Assembly: GCA_047495785.1 (NCBI GenBank)
Contig: JBLDXI010000054.1
Location: 1,488,001 to 1,552,000 of the forward strand
Source of the DNA: Lepidodermella squamata
Lineage: Eukaryota > Animalia > Gastrotricha
DNA length: 64,000 bases
Direction: 5' to 3'
Part shown: one piece after another, positions 42,141 through 64,000 of the stretch
Position numbering within the stretch: the stretch's first letter is position 1
Layout: each line of letters opens with the position of its first letter
The notes under the pieces: model-generated
What the model was told of the DNA's origin: nothing
Databases searched by the model: none
Seen by the model: the letters and a program-made list of their open reading frames with translations, nothing else
Made by a program: the position numbers and the translations under genes

Positions 42141-42159
42141 AATCTTATATAAGGAATCA

Positions 42160-43708: not shown

Positions 43709-44844
43709 TTTATAGTTTCCTTGTGGAAGAATGCGCAATACTTGCGTATACCAAGCTTTGTTTGTTTTCTATTATCTTGCTTTCTCGTGGTGTTTATATT
43801 TCCTTAGGATGATGTATCACAAACATCCTACCTGTATCGAATATTTGTTTTAGGAAATACCAACGATCCAGAAGCTTTCGGAGGCCTTCACTTCAGGTAG
43901 GTATACAGGTGTACGCACGCAATGGAGTTCCAAATAAAGTAAATCAAAGCAAATTTACTTGCAAATCACTCAATCAATTTACTTGCACGTAGAAAGGTCA
44001 TTGACTGACGTGCCGCGGAGAATTAAGTCCGAATCTATGGTGGGGCCTGGCACGCGACCAACGTCATACATTGAATTGTTATCTTAGTTTCATGATCTCG
44101 TGCTAGGCGACCTTGACCCCGCTGAACTGTTATCGATTCAAAGTTCGAAGTAGCCTGATTCGCGACGTTACTTAATGCGCGAATGCAAAATCACTGATGC
44201 CATTTCTTGAAGCTTAAAGCCTTCGAAGTCTTCATCGCTGTTCTAGGGGAAGTGTCTATTGCCTGAAAAACAGGAAAACAAATAACGACTAAACAAAATG
44301 GTCAAATTCATTGGCAATTCGCCTTCGAAAATACGAAAATGAGCATTCAGAAGTAAAGCTTTTATGCAAATTTAGGGCACCCTCGAGCGATTTTCAATGT
44401 TTGCCTTTTTTAACTTTGAGCAACGATGGCTTGCTAACGGTGAGGAAGTGGCTCATGAGATGCAAGCTTGGAATGACTAGGGTTTGAAAAAAGTGGAAAT
44501 GTTTTATGCATATTTAGGTAACAACACTCCACCTAATAAGCACCAAAATAGCGAATTTCTAACTAATAAAATGCCAAAATCTGACCGCCTTCACAAGGTC
44601 TCAAAAGTGTACGCCGATTAACTATACCCCTGCCCTTTTCTCAACGGTTTTGATAAGGAATATTTTTTGTGTCTGCCACTGAGCATGGTCCAGTGGCGAA
44701 AAATCTGAAGCTACTACTTACTACTACCTAGTTGTACTACCTACTACAAATCTTCGTTTTCAACGGACTCACCTTGATTATTATTTCGACAGAGAGTTGC
44801 TCATTTTATTCCAAAACTTTGGAAGCCTCAATCATTCATTTTGG

Positions 44845-45912
44845 TCAAGAGTTAATGATCTTTACGAAAATTGAAGAGTAGAAAACGACCAAAACAACGA
44901 GAAATACTACAAACACGACGAAATCGATGACCAGAAAAGCGCGAAATGTAGCCGTTCGAAATCGCCACTTCGCAGTCGCCTGTTCGGGATACAGCGTGAT
45001 GAATGAACACATGACAGCCGCGTAGACGGTACAAGCCATTTGAAACACAACTTGTCCAAAGATGAAGTAAGTCGCAATGATCGGCTCGCTTGTCTTGGGC
45101 AGATTCGCCTGCATTTCAGACTGCAGAACGAACATTGCAAGCATTAGAGTGGCTGCGAAAGCAGCTCTGTCTGGGCATTCTGCTGGCAAAAAGAAGCTAC
45201 ACAGGCTGAGTATTGTAAGGATGAAACTAGGTGCGAACAAATTATTAATCACATAACTCGGATCGCGCTTGATAGTTAAGCAGAAGAATGCTGTTGCGTT
45301 TTTCGGGCCAACTCGAGTTGTATATGATTCTAGTTTCCAAAGTGAGCTTCCTGGCATAGCATCGGCTATTGTTTCCTCCACTGGAAATACCAAAGTCCCT
45401 AGTACAACATACTGAGAAATTCCCAACAGCATTATTTTGATACAACACTCCTGGGTGTCGAACGGGAATCGCCAAAAATGCATCGGGCAATACGAGCTGA
45501 GAGGGCCGTATATTTGATTCGTATAAAATCCCTCTTGTACAAGCACCATAACAGATCTACTTATTGCCTCTCCCTTCATAGCTGGGTTATCTGGGCTATT
45601 TCGGTGAATGAAAGTCGGCCACCAAATGCGATCGTTGCCATTGGGTAGGAACATTTGTTTAACATTGCCCGACTGCTGTATCAAGTCAGCTGAGTTGTTA
45701 GACGTGCATGCATCTTCCCAAGCAAAGACGACCAAGGCAAATACTGAGAAAACCTCTTCGACATCGTCGATTTTCAGCACTCTATCAATGGCAAGTACCA
45801 CAGTGATATTGGTCGGTTTGTCGTAGATTTCGCTAGGCGAGTTGACCAGTGGATCTATGTGACACGTTGCAAGCAGCAAATCAAGCAAGGCAATAGTTCC
45901 CTTGTTAGGCAT
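44845..45912 (-). CDS. Cys-loop channel subunit, type B, 355 aa
   Basis: CPMHFWRFPFDTQEC, 4 TM. ATG chosen by alignment to paralogues. Confidence 0.92.
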   Translation of the reverse strand: MPNKGTIALLDLLLATCHIDPLVNSPSEIYDKPTNITVVLAIDRVLKIDDVEEVFSVFALVVFAWEDACTSNNSADLIQQSGNVKQMFLPNGNDRIWWPTFIHRNSPDNPAMKGEAISRSVMVLVQEGFYTNQIYGPLSSYCPMHFWRFPFDTQECCIKIMLLGISQYVVLGTLVFPVEETIADAMPGSSLWKLESYTTRVGPKNATAFFCLTIKRDPSYVINNLFAPSFILTILSLCSFFLPAECPDRAAFAATLMLAMFVLQSEMQANLPKTSEPIIATYFIFGQVVFQMACTVYAAVMCSFITLYPEQATAKWRFRTATFRAFLVIDFVVFVVFLVVLVVFYSSIFVKIINS

Positions 45913-46091
45913 GTCTACGTTCCTATATACAGCCTGAAGTTGAAATGCGACAGCAATTTCTGCATAACTGTGTTTGCTATGCTCCATGTTATTTGCTTTG
46001 TAAATAAACATTTCGATCGGATGTTGGATCAATTTCGATTTTAATCACTTTGAGATCTCAACCATTATCATGTGGTGCTGTGTGTGTTTTT

Positions 46092-47825
46092 TCATAAATT
46101 TGTATAGCGGTGCATGCGAAGTGGCCGATCTAAGCTGTTGTTCGGCCCCACTTGCGGGTACATTACCGTTGGTCTAGGCTGCACAATCTTCCCTGGTGTA
46201 GCTGGGGGTGGTACTGAAAATGCAGATTGGCGTTGATGGAGAACGGATGGCGGGGCTGCAGACGGGAATTTGAGTGGGTAGTTTGAAGATAAGGGCCTCG
46301 GGGTTAGTTCCGCCGCTGAATCATCTAAAGGAATATTCAAATAATTCAAAAATTCAGAAATTCGAAAAAAAACTTTAAAAATTATAATAAATTTTAATTT
46401 TTAATTGGAAAAAGTCAGATTAAAAAAATGAAAAATTTATTTTTCAATTTGAAAATTCAATTTGAAAATTGAAATTCGATTTTTTCAAATAAATCTTTAC
46501 CTGGTTTCCATAGAGCACTTCGGCTTCGAGCAGGTAAAGACCCAGTTGCTGAATCCTGTTCTAGCTGCAAAGGTGGGACATATGCCGGCCTCTGAGGCGG
46601 CATTTGTTGTTTCTTCACGTACACAGGCTTAATATAGCCCGAAGAACTCGAAGGTTGTGTTTGGAAACCCCGCGGAAGGCTCTCCTGAAAAAATGCGCTC
46701 ATCGGCTGAGGAATCGGTATTTCCTCCTCGATAACAACGGGCGACTTATTTTCCTTGCCAGATTTTGATTTTCCTGATTTTTGCTTAACAGCTGCTGATT
46801 TTTTAGGTATTATTGGCGAATGTTTCGGCGTTTGTGTAGCAGCTTCAGGGTTATTAAGATTGAGCTGCAGCCGATGTTGTTCGAATTTTAGAGCGATCCA
46901 AGCTAAAAGAAATCATCAATTAAATTTGAAAATAATTCGAATTTCTCGAATAATTTATAGTTAATTTAAATAAAAATTTGGAATAACTCGATTTTTCTGC
47001 TTACAAGGAGGGATTGGCGTTGTATCTTGAATTTCTTTCTCCAACAGCCTAAAAATTAGAAATGTTGACATAATTAGTACTAAAAATGTCTCTACTTAAA
47101 TATACCCAGCGTCTTTAACGAATTCGTGAAAATCGCCGTCTGACATCGAATCCGCTGTCAGCCATTTGAAGAACGATTCGGAGGAAAGCAGAGCATATTG
47201 CCTGGCACCAGCTAAAAATTTCTCCGCTTTTTCGCCATATTTCAGCTTCATTTGAATAGCTATTAATATCGCTGATACAGCCGCAGCACAGCCACTAAAA
47301 ATTCTCTGAAATTCCGCTAAAAAAAATAAGAAAATTCAAGATTTCAAGAATCAAGAAAATTTTGAAAATTTTGAAAATTTTAATTTCGAAATTTTAATTT
47401 TAATTAAAAAAAATTTCGAGTCTCTAACCGTTATCTTTAGCAGCGACAAAAACCATGGCTACAGAGCATTGAATCAGCATAAGAGGTACAAAGAACAGAA
47501 ACGAGTCGAGTTGCCGGTAGACACTCGCCGAATACGTGAAAGTCGCACGTTTCTCGCGAAATCGAACGTGCATAAAAGCTAGCAAGGTCGGCCTATCGCC
47601 TGTCCGGCTCGAAATTGCAACTGGCGGCAAATCGTTTGGCGGCTCAGGTGTTGATGATCCAGATCGATTCGAATTTACTACATGCGGCTCGAGAACTTTT
47701 ATCGAATCGATTGCTAACATGGGGGAAATACTCCGTCGAGCGGTATTTTCGGCGCTTTTAATATCGTCATCCTCAGGATCGGGGGAGGCGAGAAATTTTA
47801 CCTCTGGCTTTGGAGAGACTGACAT
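46092..47825 (-). CDS. SLATT-like 2TM protein; exons 47825-47429, 47316-47106, 47048-47005, 46902-46501, 46324-46092 (~428 aa)
   Basis: All four GT-AG introns are phase-consistent. Core reads ASVYRQLDSFLFFVPLMLIQCSVAMV..IFSGCAAAVSAILIAIQMKLKYGEKAEKFLAGARQYALL...EIQDTTPIPP, with disordered flanks. Confidence 0.75.
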
Positions 47826-48555
47826 TATTTTTGAAAATTCTAAAAAAAAATGAAAAAATTCTAATTTAGGGATTTTGCGTTTTTTCTGATCATTAAGGGA
47901 GCTTTTGGCGGCGCTTTTGATTAGAGGGCCAAGAAAATTTTTATTACGTGGCCATGCGTGTACCTGGCACGCGCAAACAAGGCTTTTTTATTCACTGTGC
48001 GCAATAAAATGCTGCGTAATAAAATACGCGCAGTCGCCGCGCTAAACTTTTCTACTATAAAATAATGTTATATATTATATACGGCGTAAATTTTATAATT
48101 TACAATGATGTATATTTTTGTGGTTTTAGTACCAATTTTGAGGTTGAAAGTGCCGCTTGTTTTTGCGCGCACACTGTCAGATCTTTTTACTATGTATTAC
48201 TTTTTACTTTTATCAAGTTTTTTTAATAATTTTTAGAAACATGCGATAAACAAAATCTTGAAAATAAATAATAATATATTTTTACGCTATCAAATGCGAC
48301 TGCTTTTGTGTATAAATGATAAATTGTGGGTAATGGTCATTAAGCATTCTATGATCATCTCTAAAAAGCTGTATTTATGATTCATCAGTCGACAGGTGGA
48401 TGATTGATGTAGAATAAACGCGTCATTTTGTTTATTTACAAGTCACATCAGTGAAATTATGATATTTACCGGCAATTATGAGCTGAGCTCATCGTTTTTA
48501 CTCCTCACATGATTATAAAAATAAAAATAAAAAATAAAAAAAATGAAAAATTGTG

Positions 48556-48611
48556 CGTCGCCAGTAGGATTCGAACCTACGCGCGGAAACCGCATCTGAT
48601 TTCGAGTCAAA
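48556..48611 (-). tRNA. tRNA-Ser(CGA), 3' portion only (anticodon arm to discriminator)
   Basis: Minus strand reads TTTGA-CT-CGA-AA-TCAGA, long variable arm GCGGTTTCCGC, GTAGG-TTCGAAT-CCTAC, TGGCGAC-G, then an oligo-T terminator. D-arm and 5' acceptor strand are absent. Confidence 0.85.
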
Positions 48612-50333
48612 TTTGAGTGTCCCTTTTTAACCGTGTTTTTTTGCCGTCATCTTTACCGTGCAGCTGCCGTAGTTTTACGAGCTCTCAAAAACTAATTTTT
48701 CTTCGATTTATGTTTGCCGTGTTTGCCATACTTGTTCGTTGGATTTTCCAATACTTCAAGCAGATCCTAGAGAAAAACTTATCATTTTGTGTGTAAAAGT
48801 TTCTGTTTTCGCAGAAAAACTAGCAGAAAACGAGCGTCTCTTTGTGTAACACGGTAAAAAACGCTACAGTAAAGCTGGAAACCAGTCACTTCGCGAAATT
48901 GGCACAGTTTTTTTCATGAAACTTGGGAAATTCGGCGTTTTGCCACCCGAGACCCAAAGTTAACTGCCAGGTGAAAATATTTCTTCGTCGCCGTTGAACA
49001 AACTTACGATTTTCCGTTATTTTCACTGCGAAGTGAGAAGTAGTGAACGAAAGTGAACGAAATTCGATGCCTCGACCTCTAGTTTTTTCGCGGAAAATTC
49101 CCTGGCTCGAAAAACTGCCTTCTACCTTTCCGGATCAAAGTGTTTTTATTTATCATAAAATTTCTCGTTTTTTCCCTAATTTTTCCTAATTATTTACCTG
49201 GATCCTGAAAATAACCGAATTTTTATCGTTTTCAGCCTGAACCATCAAGAATATAAGAATGCCAACAAAATTCGATAATTTAGATATTTCGTAAAAGCCA
49301 AATTTGTAATGACTGAAAATTGTCGTTCTAAATAAAAGCTGAAATAGGGCAAAGTCATTGTTATTATGGCGCTCGATTGTTGTGCACAATCGGGGTGCCT
49401 CGGGGTGTTGCGTAATCACGCCATGCTTCAATGTGGCTTTTTGGTTCATGCAAATCATCTTATTTTTGTTTTTAATTCCAAAACATCAATGACCTATTTA
49501 GTAAGAATTTTTCGTCCGACCTCAATTTCGTATTTTGAGCTTCATCAATCCCCGCCGCCTTGCTACCAGGTGTGTCGATCATACAATCTGGACAAGTCAA
49601 ATATTTATCGAATTTTCAAGGTAATTTTGAAATTAATTCCATTTTCTTTAATTTACCCGCAATTTTTGAAGGTTTGTCCCGCGAATCGATTTAGCTGTCG
49701 AACCAGTCTTAACCAGTCGGTCAACAAATCGTAACGGTATCGATGAAAAATTGACAGGTAGGTATTTTCGTGTTTAATTAATTTCAATTATTAATTGTTA
49801 TTTATTTCCATAGTTTCTTCGGGCCTGTCGCAGTGGCGGTTTTCTGCGAAGTCAAAGCAGCTATTCGAGCATGGCGCCTCGTGAAACAGCATCCACAATT
49901 AACTTGACAATATTTCATTATTGCAATTGATCCATTTTTGATGAATAAAATGAAACTGGCATCAAAGGATTTCCGTTTTAAACTGTCTTTTTTGAAGCAG
50001 TGCAAGCCACGTTTTTTCAATAATAAAAGTAAAAACTGCCCGAAGTGAAAGTTCTATTGGCGACGAGCAAGTGACTGCGCAATATAGAAAACATTTCTCA
50101 CAGCGAAACTCTCACCGCGGTTCCGCTGGCCCAGCTCCGCAAAAAACTACACTTTCAACAGAATACTGTCCTCAGACAAACTCTCGCTAATTTGCATCTT
50201 TAGTTTATTTTATTTAGGCAGTTAGAAGGCCTGAAATTGTCGCTCAGGGTATACCGCAATTTTTTCTTGTCGTGGTTTTACGAAGTTTTGCCATGAAAGC
50301 CTCGTAAAACTTACGGTAAACTTTCGTATTACG

Positions 50334-51076
50334 GAAAAATGCAAAATGCAAAATGTAAAATTGTAGTGGGAAAAATGCAAAATGCAAAATGTAAAATTGT
50401 AGTGGGAAAAATGCAAAATGCAAAATGTAAAATTGTAGTGGGAAAAATGCAAAATGCAAAATGTAAAATTGTAGTGGGAAAAATGCAAAATGCAAAATGT
50501 AAAATTGTAGTGGGAAAAATGCAAAATGCAAAATGTAAAATTGTAGTGGGAAAAATGCAAAATGCAAAATGTAAAATTGTAGTGGGAAAAATGCAAAATG
50601 CAAAATGTAAAATTGTAGTGGGAAAAATGCAAAATGCAAAATGTAAAATTGTAGTGGGAAAAATGCAAAATGCAAAATGTAAAATTGTAGTGGGAAAAAT
50701 GCAAAATGCAAAATGTAAAATTGTAGTGGGAAAAATGCAAAATGCAAAATGTAAAATTGTAGTGGGAAAAATGCAAAATGCAAAATGTAAAATTGTAGTG
50801 GGAAAAATGCAAAATGCAAAATGTAAAATTGTAGTGGGAAAAATGCAAAATGCAAAATGTAAAATTGTAGTGGGAAAAATGCAAAATGCAAAATGTAAAA
50901 TTGTAGTGGGAAAAATGCAAAATGCAAAATGTAAAATTGTAGTGGGAAAAATGCAAAATGCAAAATGTAAAATTGTAGTGGGAAAAATGCAAAATGCAAA
51001 ATGTAAAATTGTAGTGGGAAAAATGCAAAATGCAAAATGTAAAATTGTAGTGGGAAAAATGCAAAATGCAAAATGT
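50334..51076. repeat. Perfect 36-bp tandem array, ~20.6 copies (GAAAAATGCAAAATGCAAAATGTAAAATTGTAGTGG)
   Basis: Directly visible; identical units with an internal 7-bp AAAATG(C/T) subrepeat and no spacers. Confidence 0.97.
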
Positions 51077-51240
51077 CGGGGAGGCTTGAAAGCCTATATA
51101 ATTGCATTTTGCAAAGTGCAAAAAGAAATGAGCAACGTGCATTAATTGCATTTATGCAAAATGCAAAAAGTCAAAAAAGCTCGGTGGTAAGCCGAAATGG
51201 TTAGTAAAAAGTGTTTATAATAAAAAAAAATATATAAAAC

Positions 51241-51311
51241 GCGCCATCATCGCGCATCGAACCATTGATCATTGGCCTTGATAGTGTAATAAATCCACCA
51301 CTCGGCCATCG
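51241..51311 (-). other. Degenerate tRNA-derived (SINE-like) Pol III promoter segment
   Basis: A-box TGGCCGAGTGG and B-box-like GGTTCGATGC at tRNA-like spacing; no cloverleaf. Confidence 0.45.
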
Positions 51312-53930
51312 TAATATTGATAATAATCAAATAAAAATTGTAAACAATATAAAGTGTAACATCCAATCTCCGTCACACCTATTATCATCAATTTCGGATA
51401 TTATCTCGACACGTTTTTTTGTATAACCATGCGATGATATACATGATATACAAAATATCTAATGTAAAACTTTCGATTAAAAAACTTTTCGCGAAAATAT
51501 GGGGTCGTCGCCCTACAAATTATTAGATATTTAAAAAAAAATATTATTTTATAAAATCGTGATTTGTAGATACCTGTTGATAGATTACAATAGAGGCTAA
51601 AGGCGTCGCGTTGCTTTTGAAAGGGGTCGCACTCGAAATAATGATCACCAATATAATAAAAACTTAACAGCCCCCCTAGTGAAAAAAATCCTTATTGCAC
51701 CTCTAAAATACCCTATTATACACTATAATAGCACTAAAATACCTAAAAAGTCAGGATTTTTTCACTAGGGCCCTTACAAACAACGCGACAAAGGTATACC
51801 GTATAACGGCATATTCGGAATATTAATTTTTTCATCGTCGAAAATGCATTGTGAAAAATGTAGGTAGAAAATCAGCTCGTATAATATAAGTCTAAAAATA
51901 ATATAAATTTCGAATTTACCACCAGGATTTTCGTGGAACCGTAAAAGACTGAGAATCGTCGTTAGGGTTTAAAGGACAGCTGACGGCTGGCGATAGGCTT
52001 CCGGGGCCGACAGATCGGTCGCGAACAACTTGCTTTCACCCAGCAAACAGTAACAACAATAAATATATTTACCGGATGCTTATATATATATATATATATG
52101 TGTTCAGTCTGTCAATTTCGAAAACTGCCATGGAAATATTAAAACTTAATTTCTTGAAACGGCTTTCAATGAATAAAAAAGACATCGCCAATGCAATATC
52201 CTATTTCAGTTCTTTGAGTGTGTTACTAAAATAACCATTCGTAACATGAAAATGTTTATCATGACATGATACAAAATTTGATACTTCCATTATTTTCCTT
52301 TAAATAAACATCACGTGTAATGCATATTTTAGGCCATAGTGATTCTCAAACCCTGTTTTTCCGGCCACAAGCTGCCGGCGAGGCCCACTTTTGCGGCCGG
52401 CAGAGTTCCGCCTATCTCATGCATTGCGAGCAGCCGGGCGGCTCTTTCGAGGCGAACAGCCCATGGTTTCACATAATTTAGGCAATCATTTGGGAGCATC
52501 CGCCGGTTCATTCATTGCTTATTACAAACCATGTTGTATTTTATTGCCAAAGATGTGCGCGTGACCTAGATTCAGCGTAACACCGCCTTAATTACGGCGT
52601 GCGGTCACCGCTATTCGAATAGACAGCACGTGTCAAAACATAATTCGAATTTTAATACCTCCGATTATTTTATAGTAACCCTTATTTTTAACGCCCCTTA
52701 TCGCACAAAAATTTGCCGAAGCGGATGTTAAAACTTCGACAGCCGCAAATAATGTTGTAACAAAATGTTTACACTGCGAGGAATGTAATAAATGATCTTT
52801 TATCGACAGTGAATTACAATTTTTAGGTTTATTACTCGCCCGGATAGTAATTGCTTTTATTAAACAGCAAGTTTATACTATTTCTGACAGTAACTTTTAT
52901 TGGCGATTTCTCTATACGATGATGCCGATTTTTCTTTAGCCGATTTTCGGATTTCTAATTTGGGTTATTTCCCAAAAAATTACAAAAAAAATGTGAGCCG
53001 CGACGAAACCTAAGCCGCTATTAAAAAACGGCCGTATACAGTATTAACTGAAATTATGACCAAAATTTTAGTTGGGCTCGTTTTTTTTAAGTTTTTTTTA
53101 TATTTTATTTACGTCGGACCTGCCTGAAATTTTCTTTAGAATTAGAAGGGGGGTCGTGCGTGACATCTCCTTATCGTCGATACCGCTGATGAATTTTGCG
53201 TCGCGACATTTCCGCCGAAGCCAGCAACTATTGCGCCCACGACGTTTCAGAAACGAATAATTATTTTTCATATTTCGCGATAATCCCATCAGGGCGAATT
53301 TAACGCGGTGATTTTTTTAAATAAAACAAGACTTGTTGCTCGCGCCGTTAATTTGGCGACGCCAGCGCTGTTTAAATTAATTTAATTCCTGCGCTTCTAA
53401 CCAAGAGGCCATATGGCTTAATCGATCAGAAGCTCGCTGAATACATGAAAGACCAATGCCATAGCCGCCAATTCCACGTCGACACGGGCTATCACGCCAA
53501 CGACCACCCCTCTCTGTAACCGCCCCATTACTTTTCGCTAGAATTTTTCGTTGAAAATGAACTTAACTGTTTGCGTCAAGTTGAATTTCTCTGGTAACGG
53601 CGAGTTATTGCCATAATTCCATCCTAAGAAAATTGTCGAATAAACCCTTACGATCCCAAAACCTAAAAATTTCTCAAAAATTATTCTTTATAACAAAAAT
53701 TCGTAAAAACATTTTTGCCATTTATTTCATCGCACTAAACCCTTCTAACGAGAATGTCAGACAAGTTTTCAAAGACTAGATAACTATCGATTGGGAAAAA
53801 ATTCCTCATGTAGGCTTGTGATTTCGAATGGCTCTTGAAACATTGCGAATTATTGGAACATTTACGTTTTGGAAAAAATGAGTATTGAACCCTTCTTTTT
53901 TTATTATCGAATATTTTATAGTTTTAAAAA

Positions 53931-55585
53931 ATGAGTGTTGAAACTTTCACGTGCAGATCCTTGACTGTTATATCGTATTCGAACCCGAGGTTTCAGACAG
54001 GCAGATATCTGGTGAATGCAATCGTATCTACAGTCGACGAGCCGGAAGTACGTATGGCAGCCGAGTTTAATAGCGTTGACTTGAGTCGCTACGACGATAT
54101 TGACTTTCTCTCGACATTGGAATTTCCTCGACTCCTGAGCCCCAAGCAGCGGACAATTGTCAATACATGGGCGCCACGGTCTGACTTTCCAGATTATTAT
54201 GTCGATCAATCACTCGATCTCGAAAATTTGCGAATTAGTTTGCCGTCCTATTTGGGTCGGAGCCATTTTTTTCCTATAAATCGAAACTGGGAAGCCGAAA
54301 ATTTGGAACTGCTTTTCGCATCAAATCGACCAAGAAAAGATGTGTCTGCGCACGTCATTATCACCCGTGTTGGAGTCACCAGAGACTGGTCACCGGACAT
54401 CGTTGAAAGGCCCTTATTCCTAACAATGGCGCGATTTAAGGATGTGATATCTGATTTCGAAGGAGGTAGGAATGATAGGCGGGGTGAACCTTAATTTTAA
54501 CTCAGATTTAAGCTTAATTTCACTCAGATTTACCTCTGATTTAAGCGACTACCGAATTTTTTGATTTTATCAATTTTAATAAATTTAGTATTAATTTACG
54601 ATTTTTCTTCTCACAATTTTTATGTTTTTATTAACGTTGAAAAATAATCTGAGGTGAAGCTATTTTCATATAGGCTCATCAACCCCACGGTTTCACTTGA
54701 TTTATTATATTTTGGAAAAGCCGCATGAACGCAAATTTGGAGAAAAATTACTGCGTATTATAATAATTTTTTTTAAATATTTCAGCCCCGATTTTTATCT
54801 CTAAAATATAATTTCGGAAGTATCAATGGGCCTAAAGCCTTCATTCAGAGCTTTCAAGGTTGCCCTGATCAATCAGCATAATTTAAAATAAATCATCATT
54901 GAATTTAGCGTAAAATTCTGTTTAAAATTCTGTTTATAACTCATCACTGCGGAATTCATGCATTGCCTTAATTTCGAAGAAATATTCTAAAAGTGACCTT
55001 ATGCTTAACTGTAATTAGGTTCCGCGACATGCCGATTTCGTTCCGCTAAAAGTTATTCTGATAATATAAAATGATGATAAAAGTTTACGATTTGTGTTTA
55101 TAGATTTCAAACTATGGGGTCATGAATGGGCTCGCTTCGCGAAGCGCGTGAAAAACTGTCATTTGTTACTGCGCGATGTGGAATATCTGTACGAAGACAA
55201 GTATAAGCGTAGCTACCTCGTTACTGGCGGTAGAACTACGTACTCACTTCTCTACAACGACGCCACCATGGAAGCCATCGCTGTTAATGAACGAGATCTC
55301 GCCGTTGATGTCCGTAAACGCGCACTGGGAAACGCTCCCGACGCCTCATCAGTTGCTGCAAAGCATCGCCTGGTCGACCCTCGAGGTTTGGTCGTTACTT
55401 CAGATCCCGCAGGCCCTGTTGATGAACATCTCCCTAGCAATCGCCGGATCGAACCCGAACCAGTACCCGGCCCTTCTAGCCGTCGCCAACCAATATCGCC
55501 GCCAATTATTATCCCGCACGGATTAGGAAATCTGCCTACCGTCGCCATGCATCTAAGGGAAGCCATTCGGCAGACGAAAAATTAA
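53931..55585 (+). CDS. Uncharacterised protein, probable OB-fold; exons 53931-54465 and 55104-55585 (~338 aa)
   Basis: Phase-1 intron keeps frame. VSAHVIITRVG...ARFKDVISDFEGDFKLWGHEWA...LLLRDV...YLVTGGRTTY resembles RPA/SSB OB strands. Pro-rich tail. Confidence 0.55.
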
Positions 55586-55759
55586 TGACGTGGGTCGAAA
55601 GCTATTAAAGCTCGTGAACATGCGTAAAAGTGATAAGATGATGTGATTTTGTTGTTGTTTTAGTTTGCTGCTTTTACTGACCAATGATATTGTCGAGATG
55701 GAATTGTGCTGAAATGAAGCTCTATAACTGTTCACAATTTTTTTTTCACAATTTTTTAG

Positions 55760-58700
55760 ATGGAAATTAGTTCAAATTTAGCTGCCCTGGAAGTTCTGTT
55801 GTGTCTGTATTCCGATAGCGACAACGCCAGCACCCTCGAGGCGAAATTGGCTCAGCTTGGCGCGAAATCGACATACGACGAGTAAGAATTTGAAAATACT
55901 ACTGCGCGTCCCATAAGTTGCACAACTATTTCCTAATTTGGAATTTTTTGTTGGAAATTTAATTAAATTGCATTGAACCTATCGAGTGAAAACTCCAACT
56001 TTTATCCGCGATTCAACCGAAGACATACAAAAATGTACAGGAATAAACGCGGGAAAAACCCCGATGTTTACTTGATTACTATTTCCGTGATTTTTTGAAT
56101 TTTTCTAAAATTTTACTGGCCGTGAGATGTGACTCTCTTACATTTCACAGTTTCTAAATTCTTTTTTCCGTATACAGTGAAAGTTGTCTTAACCGGACTA
56201 AGGTCGCGCCAGGCAAAATCGTACGGTTTAGAGAAAGTCCGAATTATTTTAAACCGGACTGAGTCCGCTATAAGAAATACCAAGTGAAATTCGTGGAATT
56301 TTTAAGTTTTACAATCCAAATAACAGTTTTTGAGTACGGAGTACTAATTAATATAAATAATAAAAATATTAAGCTATATTCGCAATAATTGGGAAGTTGA
56401 TTTTTTTCAAAATTTTGAGGCTACAGCCGTCAGGCAGGTGCTGGCACTTTCTTCAAAATTATATAGAAAATTGGCCTTTTTATTGCATAAACCGGACTTC
56501 GAGCCCTAATCCGTCCGGTTTATACCACAGTCCGGTTTAGACAATAAAATTATAATGTCCACGCTTTCGGATCGAGCCACCCGAAATCGTCCGGTTTAGA
56601 GAAAGTCCGGTTTAGAGAAAGTCCGGTTTAGACCGGTCCGGTTTAAACAACTTTCACTGTACTTTCTTGCTTGTGTTACTTAGAGACACTTGATTTAGCA
56701 TCATCTCGAGCCGGTTGAAAAATATGGGCTGAAAATCCGAAAAAAGGATCTCCCGCAATTTTTACATTATTTATAAAAAAATTCATTTAAAATTACAATT
56801 AGCGACACCCTTTAAACGCAACTCGTCGACGTCAATACTTGCCAAGTCCAAGCCTCTAGCATTTTCGATCTGGCAGATTTTTTTCGAATTAAGGTTACTA
56901 ATAACATTGTTGAGTCAGAAGTCGTAGCCTATCCTGAAATATATATGAAAAGATAACTTCCAATTTTAAACTATTTTTTTAGGACTCTCCAGTGCGTTCT
57001 GTTCGAAGCCGGCTTCCTTATTGCACCTGCTGGCGATTTTGTCCTGGCCTATAAGGACGAAATATTTGCTTTCGGCGCTGTTGAGAATGGGTCTACCGTC
57101 GCAATGACGATTTCTATAAAAGACGCTATACACAAAATCGAGGGAACAATTGGCTTTCTCAGGGACGCGTTCCAAACTGATGGAGCTCGTTTCTGCCATG
57201 TAAGTCATAGGATTTATGTTTTATTGTAAATTTAGGTTAATTTTCAAATATGATTCTACAGGTGAATATTGACCCAACCCGTAGTCGTTTAGCCGCCGAG
57301 GTATGGATGGCCCGATTCCTACGATGCGGCAACGGAGAAAGCGGTTTACTCCAGCTCATCTCTGATGTCGAGGAATTTGGAAATTCCCGTGCCGTCGCTG
57401 AGGCCTCGGAAAGCCGTGGCCTACACTTCACAGCAGCCCTGATATACTCTCGCTTAGACTATCCCTTCGAAGCGCTTCGCAATTTTTACCGGTGTCGCGA
57501 TGCTATCGATCTTTCCAGCCTCGTAATAACTCTTATTTTCTATATTAATCAATTTAATGGGAATATTATAGATTCCAGAGTACATTGGATATGAAGTTGT
57601 CAGGGAACTCGCCAGAGTCGACCCGGAATTTAAGCAAGTCGCATCGCAAATCAATTTTCCCGCTCAACAACCCGTCCCGCTGAAGGTGAGCATGGTTTTA
57701 AATATTTCAATTTGGTTTTTACTCTGAGCGGAACCGAAAGTGCCTATTGCGGAACCAAATTTTCAGAAATAAATTCGTCCAAAAATGGATTTCCATTTTC
57801 CATACTTTCTGGAATTCCCCGATAAATGTGAAAAAATTCGAATTATTGATCATAAAATTGTCCGTGATTTTCAGTAAGAAGCCTGCAATCATTTTACGAA
57901 GAACACATGATCATGAAGAAAAATTATTGGAAAAATGACATCTTTTGATAATTTGCGTTTGGTGCCGCTACAGCCAATTTCGGTTCCGCAACAGGCAAAT
58001 TCGGTTCCGCTAAAAGATATTCCGTTTTAATTTAATTTTAATTTCTTTTTTTTTCTTGAAATTGTTTTTTCGCTCAATTCGTGCGATAGCAGGCCTATTT
58101 TTTTTAATTCCGCGATTCTGCGCATATGGCTATGGCTGGTTGCTTATGAGCTAATATACAATATGAAAATCGATGAAAAATATTACAAGCTTTATAAATC
58201 GACTCGGGTCACATTTTATTCAACATCAAATTCACTTTTTTCAACATCAAATTACTTTTTCTATCATCAAACTCTTTTTTCAACAGCAAATTGCGATTTC
58301 ATAATTTTTGCGATCAACACTCATCAAAGCCCTTGATGATGACCAGTCCGGAAAAATAACAGAAAATTTGGGCGAAGAATGTAGTTTATTGCTGTCGAAC
58401 CCGTTCATAAAATTATGGAAAATTGAGTTAGCTGTAATTTTGCAAAGTTACTGACAAATATTTGATTTTTGGTCAAAAAATTGAATTTTTAAATATTTAA
58501 ATATTAAATGAGAATAATTTGACGATTCTCATTTTTGCGAAGACAATGATTCAAATGAGTGAAATTAGTCCGGGCCCTTCAAGGTTAAGCTGCCGGAAGG
58601 TTTTACGCCGTTGCGCTCCACTGAATAGCCGCATGCGCTCCCTGTCTTCCGGGCGGGTATTGCCAATGTCGATAGATTTTCAACTCGCACCCTAGGCATG

Positions 58701-61700
58701 TGTCATACCAGCGAAGAATACCGCATCGGTAGGTAACACTTGTTCGCCCAAAAAATTCAGGCATTTAAGGCGACTTTCCTGCGCAGCACATATCTTCTGC
58801 ACGCGCAAACAAATCGCACGCCAAAAATCAATTGTTAAATCAATTGTACCCCGCAATTATCACCCGAGGTCATACATAACACTTAAAACCCACAACTTCA
58901 CCGCGAAAGTATATTATTCCTTATGAATTGTTAATTTCTGAAGTTTGCTGTCGAAAAAAGAGTTTGATGATAGAAAAAGTAAATTTGATGTTAAAAAAAA
59001 TATTTTCCATCGACTCCATCGAGCTAAGATTTGCTAATTTTCGCGACGGTAAAAGCGGCTTATAAGCGGCGTTGCCATTCATCATGAATCATTGTTACAT
59101 TTATTCGTAAAAATTAAAATTAATCGTAGAAATATTCAAGTAATTTGATGGACACTTGAAATGCCGCATTTTACCGTGTAAGAAATTCCGCGCGATTATT
59201 TTATTCCCGCGTTTTGAAGAAACTTCAAATTATTCGCCGATCAAAGACAAAATGTCGTAATCGATCGGCCGCGAATTAAAAAAATATCGCGAAAATTACC
59301 ACGCTTACAATATTCGACGTACGAACTTCAATAGAACCAGAATCCTCACTCATTAGTAGCAGATACGGAATCATTCCTAACTATCATAATTTGCCATCAT
59401 CTGCCTTGGCGATGGTGCACTCCTCTGATTTTTTTCATGTCCGGCGCTGGAAGAAAAACTGCAAAAAACAACGCTAATTTGAATAATCGTAATTTTTTTC
59501 CGCTGAAGTATTGGTTCGATTGGTTCGTAGTTCGTAGTATAACGAAATTGAATGCGGTTACTGCGCGAATAAAAAATTAACGATTTAATATTTTTTGAAA
59601 CCTAAGCCTGAAGTCTTAGCCGCTGTTCCAAGGGAATAATGTCTTTTTAATTTCTTAAAAAAGGAACAAAATTAATGACTAAAGATGAAGTACGATTCCC
59701 TCGAATAAGAATATTTTTTTGCACCTGCCACTGAGCAACATCCAGTGGCGAAAAATCGGAAGCCTGTTATTTTATTTTCTATCAATTATTATTAATTATT
59801 TTCCGTTATTTTTTTAATGTTATTTTATCTAACATCTATTTCTAAAACAGGCTTCGAAAATCGCTGATATCAATTCGCTGCATAACCGCGAGGCGATGTC
59901 TACCATCGCTGATACTCGAACGCCCTCTATTGCCAGTGTTGTTCCTGTTCCTTCTGATGTAGCCGGAAATGAACAAATGGATTGCATGGCTGTGGGTGGA
60001 GATCTGTTCGAGCTTGCTCGAGATCCTCAACGGCAACAACCCGAACAGACCAGTCCTCATCGTGAACAGGCCGACGAGAACTTACCTCGGTCAAGGAGTG
60101 CTTCATCTAGCGGCGAAGAAATGGATTCTGATAATGAAAATGAATCGGATGGTGAATCTGAGCAGCAGATCAATGAAATTTCGATAACTGAAGTCGCTGC
60201 TTCATCCGCTGACCCGGTGAGTATAGCTTCTTTATATTTAATTCAATAAAATTGCTTTTCTCTTACAGAATCATATCGCGAACCTGACCCCGAAGATCAC
60301 ACCAGTGGATTACCTGAGATTCGTCGCGATGTCGTGCGGCCGAATGTTCCCCGAGGGCAAGAAAACGCTAGATAGCTTTAATGTACTGGTTACGAAGTCG
60401 GGTGGTGACGTTGGACGGGCGCTGGACGCCATGTTTCTCGACCTTGGACACGCCACCGCTGATTTTCCATCTTCGAACATGGCGCCCAAGGAGTGCGTAG
60501 CGGTCGTTGCATTCTCCGTTTCAAGGGGTGACATTATATGCTGGTCGCCTAGTCGCGAGAGGAATGGCTATGCGACTTACACCGCATATCCCGTTCACTC
60601 CATCTCGAATAAATGTGCGAATTCCAACGATTTGCTCGAGGCTATAACGGCTTTTGCGGTACAAGGTTACACAATAATCTTGGTCGTGCCAACATTTCCT
60701 AGCGACGTTCCCCGTTTGGGTCTTAATTTCGAGTCCTTTCGGCCGACTGATAAATTTACCGAGAACCGAAACTCGAAGAGACTTCATGATACGAGAGAGG
60801 CCGTAGCGTCTGCGGACGCCAAGAGAAGCGTTGAGTTTCTGCTTGCTAGCAAACAACTTCACGCCCTCGATGACGCCCTGCGTCAAGAATTCGGACCCGT
60901 GGACGGCTGTATTTACTGGGTGTTCGCTAAACAAAAAGGGTCCAGCGCTACCATTGAGGAGCTTCTCATTGTCGTTCAATTCCCAGATAGAACTTCGGCG
61001 TCTTCCTGGATGGATAAAACCGATGGGGTTTTGAAGATCGGCAATCTTATGGTGCATTCTTCGTGGTTAGACCGCCAGTTCCACCGGCCGGGCTCTTATT
61101 GCCTGATCCGTGATGCCTTTCGAGAACACGGCGTCTACGATGAGAAAAGTAACGCTTGGGCTCCATACGACCCTTCGCGTTTAAACGTTTACCGCCATTG
61201 GTTGATCGAGCTAGTCCCGTCTCTACTAAGTCCTGAACTCGATGACAAGGAATTGGATGAATTTGAAAACTTTTGTAGCCGGTCGATGATCGCTCAATTC
61301 TTACCAAGGTCAGTGAAGCATTCTAGCCTCCTACGGTGGCTGAGACAACAGCTTCCATCCACAACGCATCTGAAACTGAAGCTATACAACGACAACTTAT
61401 GTACAACAGCTTATGCTACCATCGAGTTCGATAATCGGCGTGAAATGCTCATTTCTATGCCCAATTTGATGCTGGAAGCCAAAATCAGTGACACGTTCGC
61501 GAAAAATTCTAGAATCGTGCTAGTCGAGGACATTGCAAAAGAAATTATGGCTTTCGAATCGCCTGAAAATGACGTGATTTGTGGATATTATATACTCGAC
61601 CTGCCTCTCCATGCCAGCCTTGAATTTCTTCGACGAATTATTCCCGAAAAGCGCGTCATCATCACCGACCTTCCGGGCTTCAAAACTAAAGCCGCATTTG

Positions 61701-62854
61701 TTTGTTGCGATTCACCGGCCGACCGCGATGAGGCCATTGCATCTCTGTCATCTGAAATTAAAGGATGTCGTATCATTCCGTATTGCGAAGATGCGGCTGT
61801 TATTCGCGATTTCTCAGACGGCCTGAAAAATGGGCGTTATAAGCGTCTTGTTTACGGTGCAGCGGGTTCGAAGGATATCAATGATGGCAGCTGCAGTGAA
61901 ACCGACGAAGAAGAAGATAATCGCCTGCCCGCAGCCGCTAATGTTTCGGATGCCTTTATTTTTCGCTTCCGTTCAACAACAATGTTGGAATCGATTGATA
62001 ATCCAGCCTCGTACGCAGCGCCCTTACATGATGCCTTGACAGCTTATGTTGTTTTCGAGTGCCTTCGAGGACAAATGGCCGTCGATTCGCTGAGCAGCAA
62101 TTGGTTTCTAAGCAATCTGTTCAATTATTTCAGCGGTCGTTTCGACCTAGCCACCTACGCCTTCCTTTCTCACATTTATGGCAAGGCATTTGTACGTGGC
62201 CATTGGAAGTACAGAAGAGCGACGTTGCAATACACACGAATGCGTAGCAATGTTCCACTTTGCGAAATGTCAACGGCGATGCATTGCCGCTACATATTAT
62301 TTCAATATTCCTTGAAAAATATGATGGCCTCCCGTGACACCAAAGCGATCAAGACCACTCTGACGGCGATGAGATGTTTGCATGAGACACGGCGCTGTCT
62401 TGGAAAAGAAATTGTACCTGCTATTGAATTTTTCGACCGTAGCAACAACGTTCTCGTGGGCCTATGTCATCGGCAATGTGCGAATTGCGTCGCCGGGAGG
62501 ATGGATCCGCAGTTTTGCGATACCATCAATTACTTGTCTCTGCTTCTCAATAATTTCATTTCAATCTCGGCGGCCTATATCTTGCTGATGCGGGATGGAT
62601 CTGGATCTTTTTACTGTGGAAGAACCACCGTTATCAGAACACGCTGGGCCAGGCATTGTAGCTTATTCATCGCCGCTCCTAATGATCCCAGTTTAGGCGA
62701 TCGCGTGCATGCTAAACTGGCCAAGTACAACTCTTGTAACCTGCCGGCGAGGCCCTTCCACGGGCTAATGTGGCGCATCGCCGAGGGCTCGAAGCTGCCG
62801 GATTTCGAAAGCTTCCTTCATCAACGGTTCCCTACTTGCCTTGGTATTAACTAA
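55760..62854 (+). CDS. ~1221-aa protein: helical repeat - acidic linker - 3 RRM-like domains - Zn knuckle - GIY-YIG endonuclease; exons 55760-55881, 56983-57199, 57262-57522, 57572-57685, 59851-60216, 60269-62854
   Basis: All five GT-AG introns are phase-consistent. RRM-like segments at ~60830-61080, 61286-61510 and 61580-61790. CHRQCANC, then AYILL..SFYCGRTTVIRTRWARH...FESFLHQRFPTCLGIN. Confidence 0.72.
56175..56659. mobile_element. pogo/Tigger-like MITE (family of 22768..23375), intronic
   Basis: TIRs CAGTGAAAGTTGT.TTAACCGGAC / GTCCGGTTTAAACAACTTTCACTG, TA TSD. Confidence 0.9.
57728..58010. mobile_element. MITE of the 617..783 family, intronic
   Basis: Long imperfect TIRs GCGGAACCGAAAGTGCCTATTGCGGAACC / GGTTCCGCAACAGGCAAATTCGGTTCCGC; TGA and TAA flanks. 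Confidence 0.75.
58215..59000. repeat. Foldback/MITE-like element with ~55-bp inverted repeats
   Basis: AACATCAAATTACTTTTTCTATCATCAAACTCTTTTTCAACAGCAAA at ~58243-58290 is mirrored at ~58944-58995. Termini and TSD unresolved. Confidence 0.6.
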
Positions 62855-64000
62855 TTATTTCTGGCTGTTGTGAAAATACCGCAATTATTGCTACATTGTC
62901 GAGTTGACTCATTTTTTCGACTTATTGACCTGAAATCTTCGTTATTAGCTGCCCACGTTATGCGTAAAACTCATAATTGAGCTGTTTATTATTTGGAGCC
63001 TTTCGTCGTTTTATTTTACTGCTGATACTGTCTTAAATCTTGATTTGTATATTTTTTTCATTCCATAAATGTCTCTCATTGCTATAAAAATAGCCGCGGG
63101 AATTTGAAAAAAAACTGCGAAGCTACACTTTCCAATTGTTGGAAACCATGCTCAAAAACATGTGAATATTTCAGACTTGTCAGTTACAATGATAACAGTT
63201 CACCTTTGTAAACGCACCCGGTTCTACTATCTAGCATCTTATCACTCGTCATTCTCCTTTTACTTGACGTTTTATAAATGTGAAGGCTTTGTTTCTCGGT
63301 TAATATTTCCATATAAACCAATTATGAAACCGAAAGAAAATATTCGCTCTGGTGTTGTGATAAGTGAGGCCAAATAAAAGTTTTCGGATGGAAATTTTCT
63401 TGTCTATTCAAGTGGATTTTTCACGGCCGTACAGCAGTCCTTCGATTATTTTCCTAATTCCAAAATGTCTGTAACTGGAAAAAATTCCGAAATAGTGTGT
63501 GTATGCGATTTCCAAAAAATCGTGAGTTTTTTTTCGAAATTTGCTCTCTGTTCGCTGTTGTCGATTGACTCGAAGTAGCGAAATTCGTCGAATCAGTTGT
63601 AGGCGATTAAAAAAGGACAGATGTCGTTTTCCAAAGTCGATAATCTAGTCTCTGGCGCTGTTCTACGAGAGTAAATAATTTTTATTATAAAATTGGATAT
63701 ATATTGGATATTATAAAACAGGAAAACAATTAATTAAAAACGAATTTTTGTGAGCCAAGCGCGCCGATTTTGTGGCATTACGCCTCTGAAAATAAGAAAA
63801 CGAGGATTCTAAGCTACCGTACAGCCCTTATTTTTCGCGCACCAAATATTATCGCGCAGATGCCTATTTTCACCCGGTTTAATTCGCGCGTTATATTTTC
63901 ACGCGGACATCTGTTGTCAGACTTGCCAATTTTTCCAATTTTTTAAATTTTATCAATGATTTTTCCGATTTTTTAAATTTTATCAATCATTTCTTTCGAT

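What the first reader, a model, noticed from the sequence alone, without database searches (positions are those of the whole stretch)
55760..62854. Multi-RRM protein fused to a Penelope-type GIY-YIG endonuclease, with no reverse transcriptase
Seen: a 6-exon, frame-consistent gene. Its last exon has three RRM-like units (LRQEFGPV..VVQFPDRTSA; AQFLPRSV..AYATIEFDN; YILDLPLHAS..KTKAAFVCCDSPADRDEAI). These are followed by CHRQCANC and AYILL-x-FYCG-T-R-H...E...GIN at the extreme C-terminus. Known: Zn knuckle + GIY-YIG ending E..T..GLN is the C-terminal module of Penelope-like retroelements, normally preceded by RT. The segment SIDNPASYAAP..ECLRGQM..FVRGH loosely resembles the PLE thumb. No YxDD motif is evident. 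Inference: RT has been replaced by RNA-binding modules while the catalytic Y/G/R/H/E/N residues were kept. This suggests an RNA-binding, possibly RNA-directed, nuclease: either a domesticated PLE or the engine of an unusual mobile element. I do not recognise this architecture in a described family.
Basis: partly seen in the sequence, partly recalled or inferred. Interest (0 to 1): 0.9.

Follow-up and report, generated by a model that had tools for sequence, protein, structure and literature searches.

The report
Orphan RRM-like protein with GIY-YIG nuclease
This animal genome holds a real, intact gene for a large protein that joins three RNA-binding-like folds to a DNA-cutting (GIY-YIG) tail; it belongs to a small, fast-decaying family with no relatives found elsewhere, and nothing ties it to Penelope retroelements.

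Summary
A 6-exon model is frame-consistent, but no RNA data exist, so only the exon 5/6 junction is convincing.

Fold searches on a low-confidence AlphaFold model return almost only RRM proteins for residues 325-410 and 423-496. A third unit (175-251) has the same strand-helix pattern.

The C-terminus is a GIY-YIG nuclease. A paralog passes Pfam's cut-off, and Y758, Y770, G772, R780, H784, E835 and N849 are in place.

The "Penelope-type" reading is not supported:
- The two cysteines between GIY and YIG that mark canonical Penelope endonucleases are absent.
- Genuine Penelope elements of this genome show no profile similarity (E 0.17-0.29).
- There is no reverse transcriptase, hammerhead ribozyme or terminal repeat.

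The gene belongs to an orphan family. It has one collinear intact paralog (25% identity), shorter C-terminal copies and about 15 decayed fragments. Searches of public protein collections found no homologs.

Best reading: a lineage-specific, birth-and-death nuclease gene family whose RRM-like modules deliver a GIY-YIG DNase to single-stranded nucleic acid. A rival is cargo of an extinct large mobile element.

The scan had already noted this family on other DNA (s1-373947).

The parts
55760..55881 (+). Putative exon 1 (ATG at 55760). Its membership of this gene is unproven.
   Evidence: Open frame with a GT donor at 55882. In phase with exon 2. No RNA data. No copy elsewhere in the genome.
56983..57685 (+). 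Putative exons 2-4 (56983-57199, 57262-57522, 57572-57685) with two short introns of 62 and 49 nt. They may belong to a separate upstream gene.
   Evidence: Frames and GT-AG sites are. The block is copied with its introns at C24:4130715-4131396 (89% nt), beside a decayed copy of exon 6. Exons are no better conserved than introns in that copy. No Pfam match.
59851..60216 (+). Exon 5: an acidic, Ser-rich, low-complexity segment containing ATG 59896. This is the possible true start of a 2-exon gene.
   Evidence: Open frame. Donor GTGAGT at 60217 and acceptor at 60268, giving a 52-nt intron in phase with the long frame.
60269..62854 (+). Exon 6: the long coding exon. The 849 codons analysed run from 60305; the stop is at 62852-62854.
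   Evidence: Uninterrupted frame. A collinear intact paralog lies at C33:2744400-2746988: 25% identity over 830 columns, E 1e-41. GC and GC3 resemble host genes.
60827..61057 (+). RRM-like unit 1 (residues 175-251). This is the weakest of the three units.
Evidence: The model shows a beta-alpha-beta-beta-alpha-beta pattern at pLDDT 40-50. The single-domain structural alignments do not span it.
61277..61534 (+). RRM-like unit 2 (residues 325-410).
   Evidence: pLDDT 55-79 with a beta-alpha-beta-beta-alpha-beta pattern. VIA-align: Z 8.6 to the telomerase p65 xRRM, 8.4 to the La RRM and 8.1 to RBM5 RRM1. Faint Pfam RRM_1 match, E 0.19.
61571..61792 (+). RRM-like unit 3 (residues 423-496).
   Evidence: VIA-align: Z 9.5 with rmsd 2.1 over 70 residues to Pes4 RRM4, and Z 8-9 to many other RRMs. 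Other ferredoxin-like folds also appear in the list. It is the best conserved of the three units between paralogs, at 30%.
61985..62239 (+).
   Evidence: Most conserved segment between paralogs, at 46% identity. It is the only confidently modelled part of the C-terminal model, at pLDDT 80-90. No structural match: Z below 5 and Foldseek E above 2. No similarity to PLE.
62465..62518 (+). Four-cysteine cluster (C721, C725, C728, C738). Spacing is C-x3-C-x2-C-x9-C. A probable zinc knuckle about 20 residues before the GIY motif.
   Evidence: Positions. Four Cys are kept in all subfamilies, with varying spacing. The first three fit the CX2-5CxxC linker pattern described for some PLE clades.
62567..62851 (+). 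GIY-YIG nuclease domain (residues 755-849). Key residues are Y758, Y770, G772, R780, H784, E835 and N849.
   Evidence: For W: Pfam GIY-YIG 13.6 bits and 16.8 bits in the six-frame scan. For the C148 paralog: 23.0 bits and 26 bits in the six-frame scan, against a cut-off of 22.6. The family profile's best PDB match is the GIY-YIG protein 1zg2, E 0.05. Residues are listed and their conservation across subfamilies is shown.
56172..56665 (.). MITE-like insertion in intron 1, with 26-nt terminal inverted repeats.
   Evidence: Dozens of copies at 84-90% identity across the genome. Inverted repeat I4.
57722..59002 (.). Two MITE-like insertions in intron 4 (57722-58016 and 58205-59002).
   Evidence: Inverted repeats I1-I3. 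Dozens of genomic copies of the second one.

Best explanation
This is an intact member of a lineage-restricted, fast-turnover animal gene family. It is neither a Penelope-like element nor a recognisable derivative of one.

Domain order of the protein:
- an N-terminal region of unknown fold;
- three RRM-like (ferredoxin-like) modules;
- a strongly conserved helical domain;
- a four-cysteine knuckle;
- a C-terminal GIY-YIG nuclease with a complete catalytic set.

Inferred mechanism: the RRM-like modules bind single-stranded RNA or DNA, or a partner protein, and so bring the nuclease to its substrate. The knuckle and helical domain position the GIY-YIG core. The core cuts DNA by the one-metal mechanism of that superfamily.

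The family evolves by repeated duplication and decay. It has two intact full-length paralogs, several shorter copies and many fragments. That pattern fits genes involved in genetic conflict (defence against transposons or viruses, or selfish behaviour) better than housekeeping genes.

Shown: the frame, the family, the GIY-YIG membership, the RRM-like fold of two units, and the absence of RT or transposase.
Inferred: nucleic-acid binding, DNase activity and the biological role.
For: - Intact 849-codon frame.
- Collinear intact paralog at 25% identity that keeps every module.
- Catalytic Y, Y, G, R, H and E conserved in all subfamilies compared, and N in both full-length paralogs.
- Paralog above Pfam's GIY-YIG cut-off. 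Profile hit to the GIY-YIG protein 1zg2.
- RRM fold matches.
- About 20 loci, mostly decayed.
- The one DNA-level duplicate, on C24, copies the introns of exons 2-4, so it arose by DNA-level (segmental) duplication.
- Host-like composition.
- No PLE RT or Helitron helicase in the window or in family loci.
- No hammerhead ribozyme or terminal repeats.
- No similarity to this genome's PLEs.
Against: - Both AlphaFold models are poor (mean pLDDT 42-44). The GIY-YIG fold was not reproduced, and the RRM matches rest on segments at pLDDT 55-79.
- Pfam RRM_1 is far below threshold.
- The window protein's own GIY-YIG score is below the cut-off and covers only the first half of the profile.
- There is no expression evidence.
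- Scattered decayed fragments are also what an old mobile element would leave.
- No orthologs are available to test purifying selection.
Confidence: 0.5

Rival explanations
1. The gene is cargo or a remnant of a large, now inactive mobile element or endogenous virus. On this view it is an accessory nuclease once carried by a multi-gene element, and today's copies are what is left after decay.
For: - Many scattered fragments at 55-85% protein identity, with stops and deletions.
- Orphan status in every protein search.
- The orphan ORF upstream of the C33 paralog has its own four decayed copies elsewhere.
Helitron-like elements of this genome are reported to carry RPA70-like genes and GIY-YIG domains.
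- A scrambled degenerate copy lies just upstream of the intact C33 gene.
Against: - No transposase, polymerase, RT or Helitron helicase lies within the 64-kb window or the flanks I hold.
- There are no terminal repeats.
- There are no near-identical copies. The best DNA-level copy is 88-92% identical and rearranged.
- Fragments share no common ends.
- Neighbour genes are not shared between the window locus and the C33 locus.
- Composition is host-like.
Confidence: 0.25
2. The gene is a domesticated or degenerate Penelope-like element. On this view the C-terminal knuckle and GIY-YIG come from a PLE endonuclease, and the RT was replaced by RNA-binding modules.
For: - C-terminal position of the nuclease.
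- C-x3-C-x2-C upstream of GIY fits the CX2-5CxxC linker of Neptune, Nematis and Naiad PLEs.
- R, H, E and N are retained.
- The Hydra and Chlamys PLE clades also lack CCHH.
- PLEs are present in this genome.
Against: - No cysteines between GIY and YIG.
- hhalign against six PLE endonucleases of the same genome gives E 0.17 over 19 columns. That is weaker than against host SLX1 (E 0.0034).
- No similarity to PLE RT or the region after it.
- No hammerhead ribozyme.
- The E...P...N ending occurs in the genome's PLE endonucleases; from my own recall, not checked here, it also occurs in UvrC and I-TevI, so it would not be PLE-specific.
Confidence: 0.07
3. The gene encodes a structure-specific DNA repair or recombination nuclease. 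The ferredoxin-like modules would act as protein-interaction or DNA-binding domains, with no role for RNA.
For: - The best profile affinity of the nuclease core is to the host SLX1 (E 0.0034) and to 1zg2, a UPF0213 GIY-YIG protein.
- Non-RRM ferredoxin-like folds (PII-like, ACT) also score Z about 8.3-8.4.
- The RNP consensus is only partly kept, by my reading.
Against: - RRMs dominate all three structure searches.
- Housekeeping repair genes are normally conserved across taxa and single-copy. This family is orphan and decays rapidly.
Confidence: 0.13
4. The protein is catalytically dead or not a nuclease. The GIY-YIG-like tail would be a degenerate binding module, or the motif match would be fortuitous.
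For: - The window protein is below Pfam's cut-off.
- Only profile positions 2-36 of 78 align.
- The fold was not recovered by AlphaFold.
- The C148 subfamily lacks the final Asn.
Against: - The paralog is above the cut-off at E 1e-4.
- Y, Y, G, R, H and E are conserved at 25-33% overall identity.
- A beta3-like segment followed by an E-containing helix and a P...N ending mirrors the second half of the genome's PLE GIY-YIG domains.
Confidence: 0.05

Closest known systems
GIY-YIG nuclease superfamily, SLX1 / UPF0213 (URI-like) type core
   Same: The order is GIY strand, 11-residue spacer, Y-x-G, Arg eight residues later, His four after that, then a distal Glu helix and a terminal Asn. The closest profile hits are 1zg2 and the host SLX1.
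   Different: There is no RING finger as in SLX1. The nuclease is C-terminal in an 850-1200-aa protein. About 50 residues lie between His and Glu. It is preceded by a Cys4 knuckle and a family-specific helical domain.
Penelope-like element endonuclease (cd10442) and its Hydra and Chlamys variants
   Same: C-terminal GIY-YIG with R, H, E and N. An upstream cysteine motif fits CX2-5CxxC. Its absence of CCHH is shared with Hydra and Chlamys.
   Different: No RT. No CCHH cysteines inside the core. No profile similarity to PLEs of the same genome. No hammerhead ribozyme. No multi-copy element structure.
Multi-RRM RNA-binding proteins (PABP, Pub1, HuR, raver1, RBM39, La/p65)
   Same: Tandem beta-alpha-beta-beta-alpha-beta modules. 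These proteins dominate all three structure searches. Aromatic RNP1-like positions are partly kept.
   Different: Sequence is below the Pfam RRM threshold. The RNP2 aromatic is missing in unit 3. The modules are fused to a nuclease, a combination I found in no paper.
Helitron-like transposases ending in an SLX1-type GIY-YIG (same genome; earlier notes s1-374056, s1-373941)
   Same: The same genome carries GIY-YIG domains at the C-terminus of large proteins (L051: PIF1 helicase plus GIY-YIG).
   Different: No Rep or helicase is near any family copy. hhalign gives only E 0.084. The architecture upstream of the nuclease is different.

Membership tests
GIY-YIG nuclease superfamily (Pfam PF01541 / clan) | Score above Pfam's curated cut-off (22.6 bits) | tested here: inconclusive
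   The window protein scores 13.6 bits and 16.8 bits in the six-frame scan, below the cut-off. The homologous C148/C13 paralogs score 23-26 bits, above it. The window C-terminus is homologous to them at E 1e-40.
GIY-YIG nuclease superfamily (Pfam PF01541 / clan) | GIY and YIG motifs with conserved Tyr, Tyr and Gly | tested here: met
   Y758, Y770 and G772 are present. They are conserved in the W, B, C148/C13 and C26 subfamilies.
GIY-YIG nuclease superfamily (Pfam PF01541 / clan) | Catalytic Arg and His after YIG, a distal Glu, and a terminal Asn | tested here: met
   R780, H784, E835 and N849 are present. R, H and E are conserved in all subfamilies where that part is present. N is present in W and B and absent in C148.
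GIY-YIG nuclease superfamily (Pfam PF01541 / clan) | Three-stranded sheet with flanking helices (the GIY-YIG fold) | tested here: inconclusive
   The AlphaFold model of residues 546-849 failed (pLDDT 44, all-helical). Structure searches on it were therefore uninformative.
GIY-YIG nuclease superfamily (Pfam PF01541 / clan) | Metal-dependent nuclease activity | not testable with these tools
   Needs a biochemical assay.
Penelope-like element endonuclease (canonical, cd10442) | CCHH zinc-finger motif with two Cys between GIY and YIG (PMC8557442) | tested here: not met
   The spacer between Y758 and Y770 holds no cysteine in W or any paralog. PLEs of this genome have C-x2-C there.
Penelope-like element endonuclease (canonical, cd10442) | Linked PLE/TERT-like reverse transcriptase in the same ORF | tested here: not met
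   No RVT_1 hit. BLASTP against a genuine PLE of this genome gives E 0.6 or worse. hhalign gives E 0.29. W has no [YF]xDD motif.
Penelope-like element endonuclease (canonical, cd10442) | Upstream CX2-5CxxC linker motif (Neptune, Nematis, Naiad clades only) | tested here: met
   C721-x3-C725-x2-C728 is present in W. The C148 subfamily has the same spacing. B and C26 differ. This is a short pattern and weak evidence on its own.
Penelope-like element endonuclease (canonical, cd10442) | Specific sequence similarity to PLE endonucleases | tested here: not met
   hhalign of the family against six PLE endonucleases from the same genome gives E 0.17 over 19 columns. CDD profile cd10442 itself was not available.
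Penelope-like element endonuclease (canonical, cd10442) | Element features: multiple copies with defined ends, and hammerhead ribozyme motifs | tested here: not met
   No Rfam hammerhead at E up to 1 in 47500-64000. No terminal repeats. No near-identical copies.
RRM (Pfam PF00076 and clan) | beta1-alpha1-beta2-beta3-alpha2-beta4 fold | tested here: met
   Units 2 and 3 have the pattern at pLDDT 55-79. VIA-align to RRMs: Z 8-9.5, rmsd 2.1-2.9, about 70 residues aligned. Foldseek's top 50 hits are all RRM proteins. Unit 1 has the pattern only at low confidence. The model as a whole is poor, and other ferredoxin-like folds score similarly.
RRM (Pfam PF00076 and clan) | Sequence match to RRM profiles, with RNP1 and RNP2 consensus | tested here: not met
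   RRM_1 gives E 0.19 and 12 bits on unit 2 only. No family member matches. RNP1-like aromatic positions are partly kept, by my reading of the alignment.
RRM (Pfam PF00076 and clan) | Binding of single-stranded RNA | not testable with these tools
   Needs EMSA or CLIP.

The most novel reading that the evidence does not exclude
The family is a new kind of selfish or immune nuclease system of animals. Its RRM-like modules would recognise a specific RNA (a transcript, a transposon or viral RNA, or an RNA-DNA hybrid) and direct the GIY-YIG domain to cut the associated DNA. That would be an RNA-recruited DNA nuclease with no reverse transcriptase or transposase. Its rapid duplication and decay would reflect an arms race or homing-like spread.
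Probability: 0.12. Interest if true: 0.85.

Novelty: new variant of a known kind. Interest (0 to 1): 0.5.

Why it matters
By my own recall, GIY-YIG nucleases are known from homing endonucleases, UvrC, SLX1, ANKLE1, restriction enzymes and Penelope retroelements. I found no description of one fused to tandem RRM-like modules.

If the RRM-like units bind RNA, this would be an animal nuclease recruited through RNA without an RT. That bears on how eukaryotes assemble new conflict or defence nucleases from old parts.

The family has no detectable relatives in very large protein collections, yet it has two intact paralogs at 25% identity. It is therefore an example of an old but taxonomically narrow gene family with high turnover.

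The practical result is also useful. The locus should not be annotated as a Penelope-like element.

Tried and rejected
Homolog searches, all blank:
- word-indexed search with the full ORF, with a C-terminal profile and with a full-length profile;
- exhaustive phmmer over 1.84 billion representatives;
- metagenome contigs and viral contigs;
- ESM-Atlas by features, which gave only low-score GIY-YIG leads;
- PHROGs and NCBIfam.

Structure:
- Both AlphaFold jobs gave poor models because only 8-12 alignment rows exist.
- The C-terminal model gave no meaningful match, so the GIY-YIG fold is unconfirmed structurally.

RNA evidence: the only public run holding the locus appears to be DNA, probably the source sample.

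Exons were handled one by one by reference. Only its length and frame were checked in a script.

Links tested and rejected:
- Helitron-like elements: no helicase near any copy.
- PLEs.
- Neighbour genes shared between the window locus and the C33 or C148 loci: none.
- A tRNA at the region's edge, noted by s1-374142: ARAGORN found none in the window, and Rfam found none in 47500-64000 at E up to 1. A half tRNA could escape both.

Element boundaries around those copies could not be examined.


Full report
**What is there**

The window is a piece of a 121-Mb eukaryotic (animal-type) assembly, G000:C54:1488001-1552000. On the + strand an uninterrupted frame runs from 60242 to the stop at 62852-62854. 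W has no [YF]xDD motif.

- exon 1: 55760-55881
- exon 2: 56983-57199
- exon 3: 57262-57522
- exon 4: 57572-57685
- exon 5: 59851-60216
- exon 6: 60269-62854

The total is 3666 nt with one terminal stop. Exon 4 has to begin at the AG at 57570/57571. The nearer AG at 57578 gives a premature stop.

Introns 1 (1101 nt) and 4 (2165 nt) are long only because they hold three MITE-like insertions with terminal inverted repeats. Two of the three have dozens of genomic copies each.

The 52-nt intron between exons 5 and 6 is convincing. Exon 5, however, contains an ATG at 59896 that would start a self-contained two-exon gene. Exons 1-4 could then be a separate gene.

No RNA run holds the locus, so the splice model stays untested. 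I did not search or fold the joined product. Only its length and frame were checked in a script.

**The family**

W has no detectable homolog in any outside search:
- the word-indexed 5.8-billion-cluster collection;
- an exhaustive phmmer run over 1.84 billion representatives;
- metagenome and viral contigs;
- the ESM Atlas.

Inside its own genome it belongs to a family:
- One intact, collinear, full-length paralog, B, at C33:2744400-2746988. It has 863 aa and is 25% identical over 830 columns, E 1e-41.
- Open 265-aa C-terminal frames in two inverted copies on contig C148, and a 92%-identical frameshifted copy on C13.
- Decayed C-terminal copies on C26 and C17.
- About 15 further fragments at 55-85% protein identity, with stops, frameshifts and deletions.

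The only DNA-level copy of the window gene is on C24, in two pieces. The first piece joins 60297-60665 directly to 61449-62265, at 88-92% identity. The second, 3.1 kb downstream, is a copy of exons 2-4 with their introns, at 89% identity. In that copy the exons are no better conserved than the introns. It is therefore a decaying, rearranged segmental duplicate.

Between W and B the best conserved parts are:
- the helical domain at residues 561-645: 46%
- the cysteine cluster: 39%
- the nuclease: 31%
- RRM-like unit 3: 30%

GC and GC3 match neighbouring host genes.

**The nuclease**

Pfam gives W only a sub-threshold GIY-YIG hit (13.6 bits, residues 758-786). The C148 paralog scores 23 bits as a protein and 26 bits in the six-frame scan. 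Both are above the 22.6-bit cut-off.

A profile of the family's C-terminal module has the GIY-YIG protein 1zg2 as its best PDB match. The E-value is 0.05, and the GIY-spacer-YIG-R-H segment aligns.

In W the expected residues are Y758, Y770, G772, R780, H784, E835 and the terminal N849. Y, Y, G, R, H and E are kept in every subfamily at 25-33% overall identity. N is kept in both full-length paralogs.

After the His comes a strand-like segment, then a Glu-containing helix, then a P...N ending. This is the layout of the second half of the GIY-YIG domains I could compare in this genome.

The AlphaFold model of residues 546-849 failed (pLDDT 44). The fold is therefore not confirmed structurally. 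I put GIY-YIG membership at roughly 85-90%.

**The RRM-like units**

The model of residues 1-560 is poor overall (pLDDT 42). Residues 325-410 and 423-496 reach 55-79, and both show a beta-alpha-beta-beta-alpha-beta pattern. So do residues 175-251, at lower confidence.

- Foldseek against the PDB returns tandem-RRM proteins in all top 50 rows, with E down to 2.7e-6.
- VIA-align, which does not depend on Foldseek, aligns residues 423-496 to RRMs at Z 8-9.5 with rmsd 2.1-2.9. It aligns residues 325-410 to the p65 xRRM, La and RBM5 RRMs at Z 8.1-8.6. Several non-RRM ferredoxin-like folds score similarly.
- The ESM-Atlas shape search lists only multi-RRM proteins, at TM 0.23-0.30.

At the sequence level, RRM_1 is only faint, E 0.19. 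'RRM-like fold' is therefore supported for two units and plausible for the third. RNA binding is an inference.

**Not a Penelope element**

By PMC8557442, canonical EN+ PLEs and Naiads are marked by a CCHH motif. Its two cysteines lie between GIY and YIG. Some clades add an upstream CX2-5CxxC linker.

This genome contains genuine PLEs:
- L057 carries RVT_1 plus GIY-YIG.
- L053-L059 have the C-x2-C inside the core, and some have the upstream linker.

The present family has no cysteine in that spacer. Profile comparisons give no support:
- hhalign against six of those PLE endonucleases: E 0.17 over 19 columns. This is weaker than against the host SLX1 (E 0.0034) or the Helitron-borne GIY-YIG (E 0.084).
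- Against PLE RT and the region between RT and EN: E 0.29.
- BLASTP: nothing.

There is no hammerhead ribozyme and there are no terminal repeats.

The one PLE-like trait is C721-x3-C725-x2-C728 upstream of GIY. It fits CX2-5CxxC, and the Hydra and Chlamys clades do lack CCHH. A remote PLE origin of the nuclease therefore cannot be excluded, but nothing positive supports it.

**Mobile or host?**

No PLE RT or Helitron helicase occurs in the 64-kb window or in the flanks of family loci that I hold. None of the 87 genomic matches to the Helitron helicase lies near the window, the C33 locus or the C24 locus.

Copies share no common ends, and none is near-identical. On the other hand, scattered decayed fragments and orphan status are what an extinct large element would leave. 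The orphan ORF upstream of paralog B has four decayed copies of its own.

It calls it an 'RPA70-like plus RRM-GIY-YIG' gene pair, and its follow-up also found no evidence of mobility. I could not confirm the RPA70-like call, since Pfam gave nothing. The window locus has no such neighbour.

**Verdict**

Most likely (about 0.5) this is a lineage-specific, birth-and-death nuclease gene family. Its RRM-like modules would deliver a GIY-YIG DNase to single-stranded nucleic acid, plausibly in genetic conflict.

The main rival (about 0.25) is cargo of an extinct large mobile element.

The architecture appears undescribed in the papers I could search. It is a new variant of a known nuclease kind, of moderate interest. 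Interest is limited by the poor models, by the absence of expression data and by the lack of orthologs.

Noticed in passing
window 56172-56665, 57722-58016, 58205-59002: Three MITE-like elements with terminal inverted repeats of 26 to 55 nt sit inside introns 1 and 4. The first and third each have dozens of copies at 84-90% identity across the genome.
   Followed up: partly
window 50189-51244: A near-perfect 36-bp tandem array of roughly 29 units, open in several frames. It is a satellite, not a gene.
   Followed up: no
window 39168-46032 (- strand): Four tandem paralogous frames that look like Cys-loop ligand-gated ion channels, by my reading of their translations. Three are long single frames of 355-395 aa. 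One (42656-43738) is split in two.
   Followed up: no
window 53931-54494 and 55094-55585 (+): Two open frames of 187 and 163 aa just upstream of the finding. They have no Pfam match. The first is single-copy in the genome. Their nature is unknown.
   Followed up: partly
L051 (G000:C29:3525501-3527429) and about 87 other places: PIF1-like helicase frames that end in a GIY-YIG domain, of the Helitron-like type noted by earlier agents. Near-identical copies recur at roughly 15-kb spacing on C42 and C20.
   Followed up: partly
L053-L059 (e.g. G000:C24:4309224-4312460): Genuine Penelope-like elements of two endonuclease types, with and without the upstream C-x2-C-x-C linker. All have C-x2-C between GIY and YIG.
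   Followed up: partly
L015 / L006 (contig G000:C148, 13.9 kb): This short contig carries two inverted, identical copies of the family's C-terminal frame. Frames resembling M17 leucyl aminopeptidase (my reading of the translations) lie beside the first copy. It may be an assembly artefact or a haplotig of the C13:2817-2819 kb region.
   Followed up: no
L014:6733-7410 (G000:C33:2741732-2742409): An orphan 226-aa frame upstream of paralog B, probably the 'RPA70-like' gene of note s1-373947. It has four decayed copies elsewhere (C74 twice, C25, C13). None is next to a known copy of the nuclease family.
   Followed up: partly
L014:2300-4700 (G000:C33:2737300-2739700): A scrambled, heavily decayed copy of paralog B lies about 5 kb upstream of the intact gene, with pieces out of order.
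   Followed up: no
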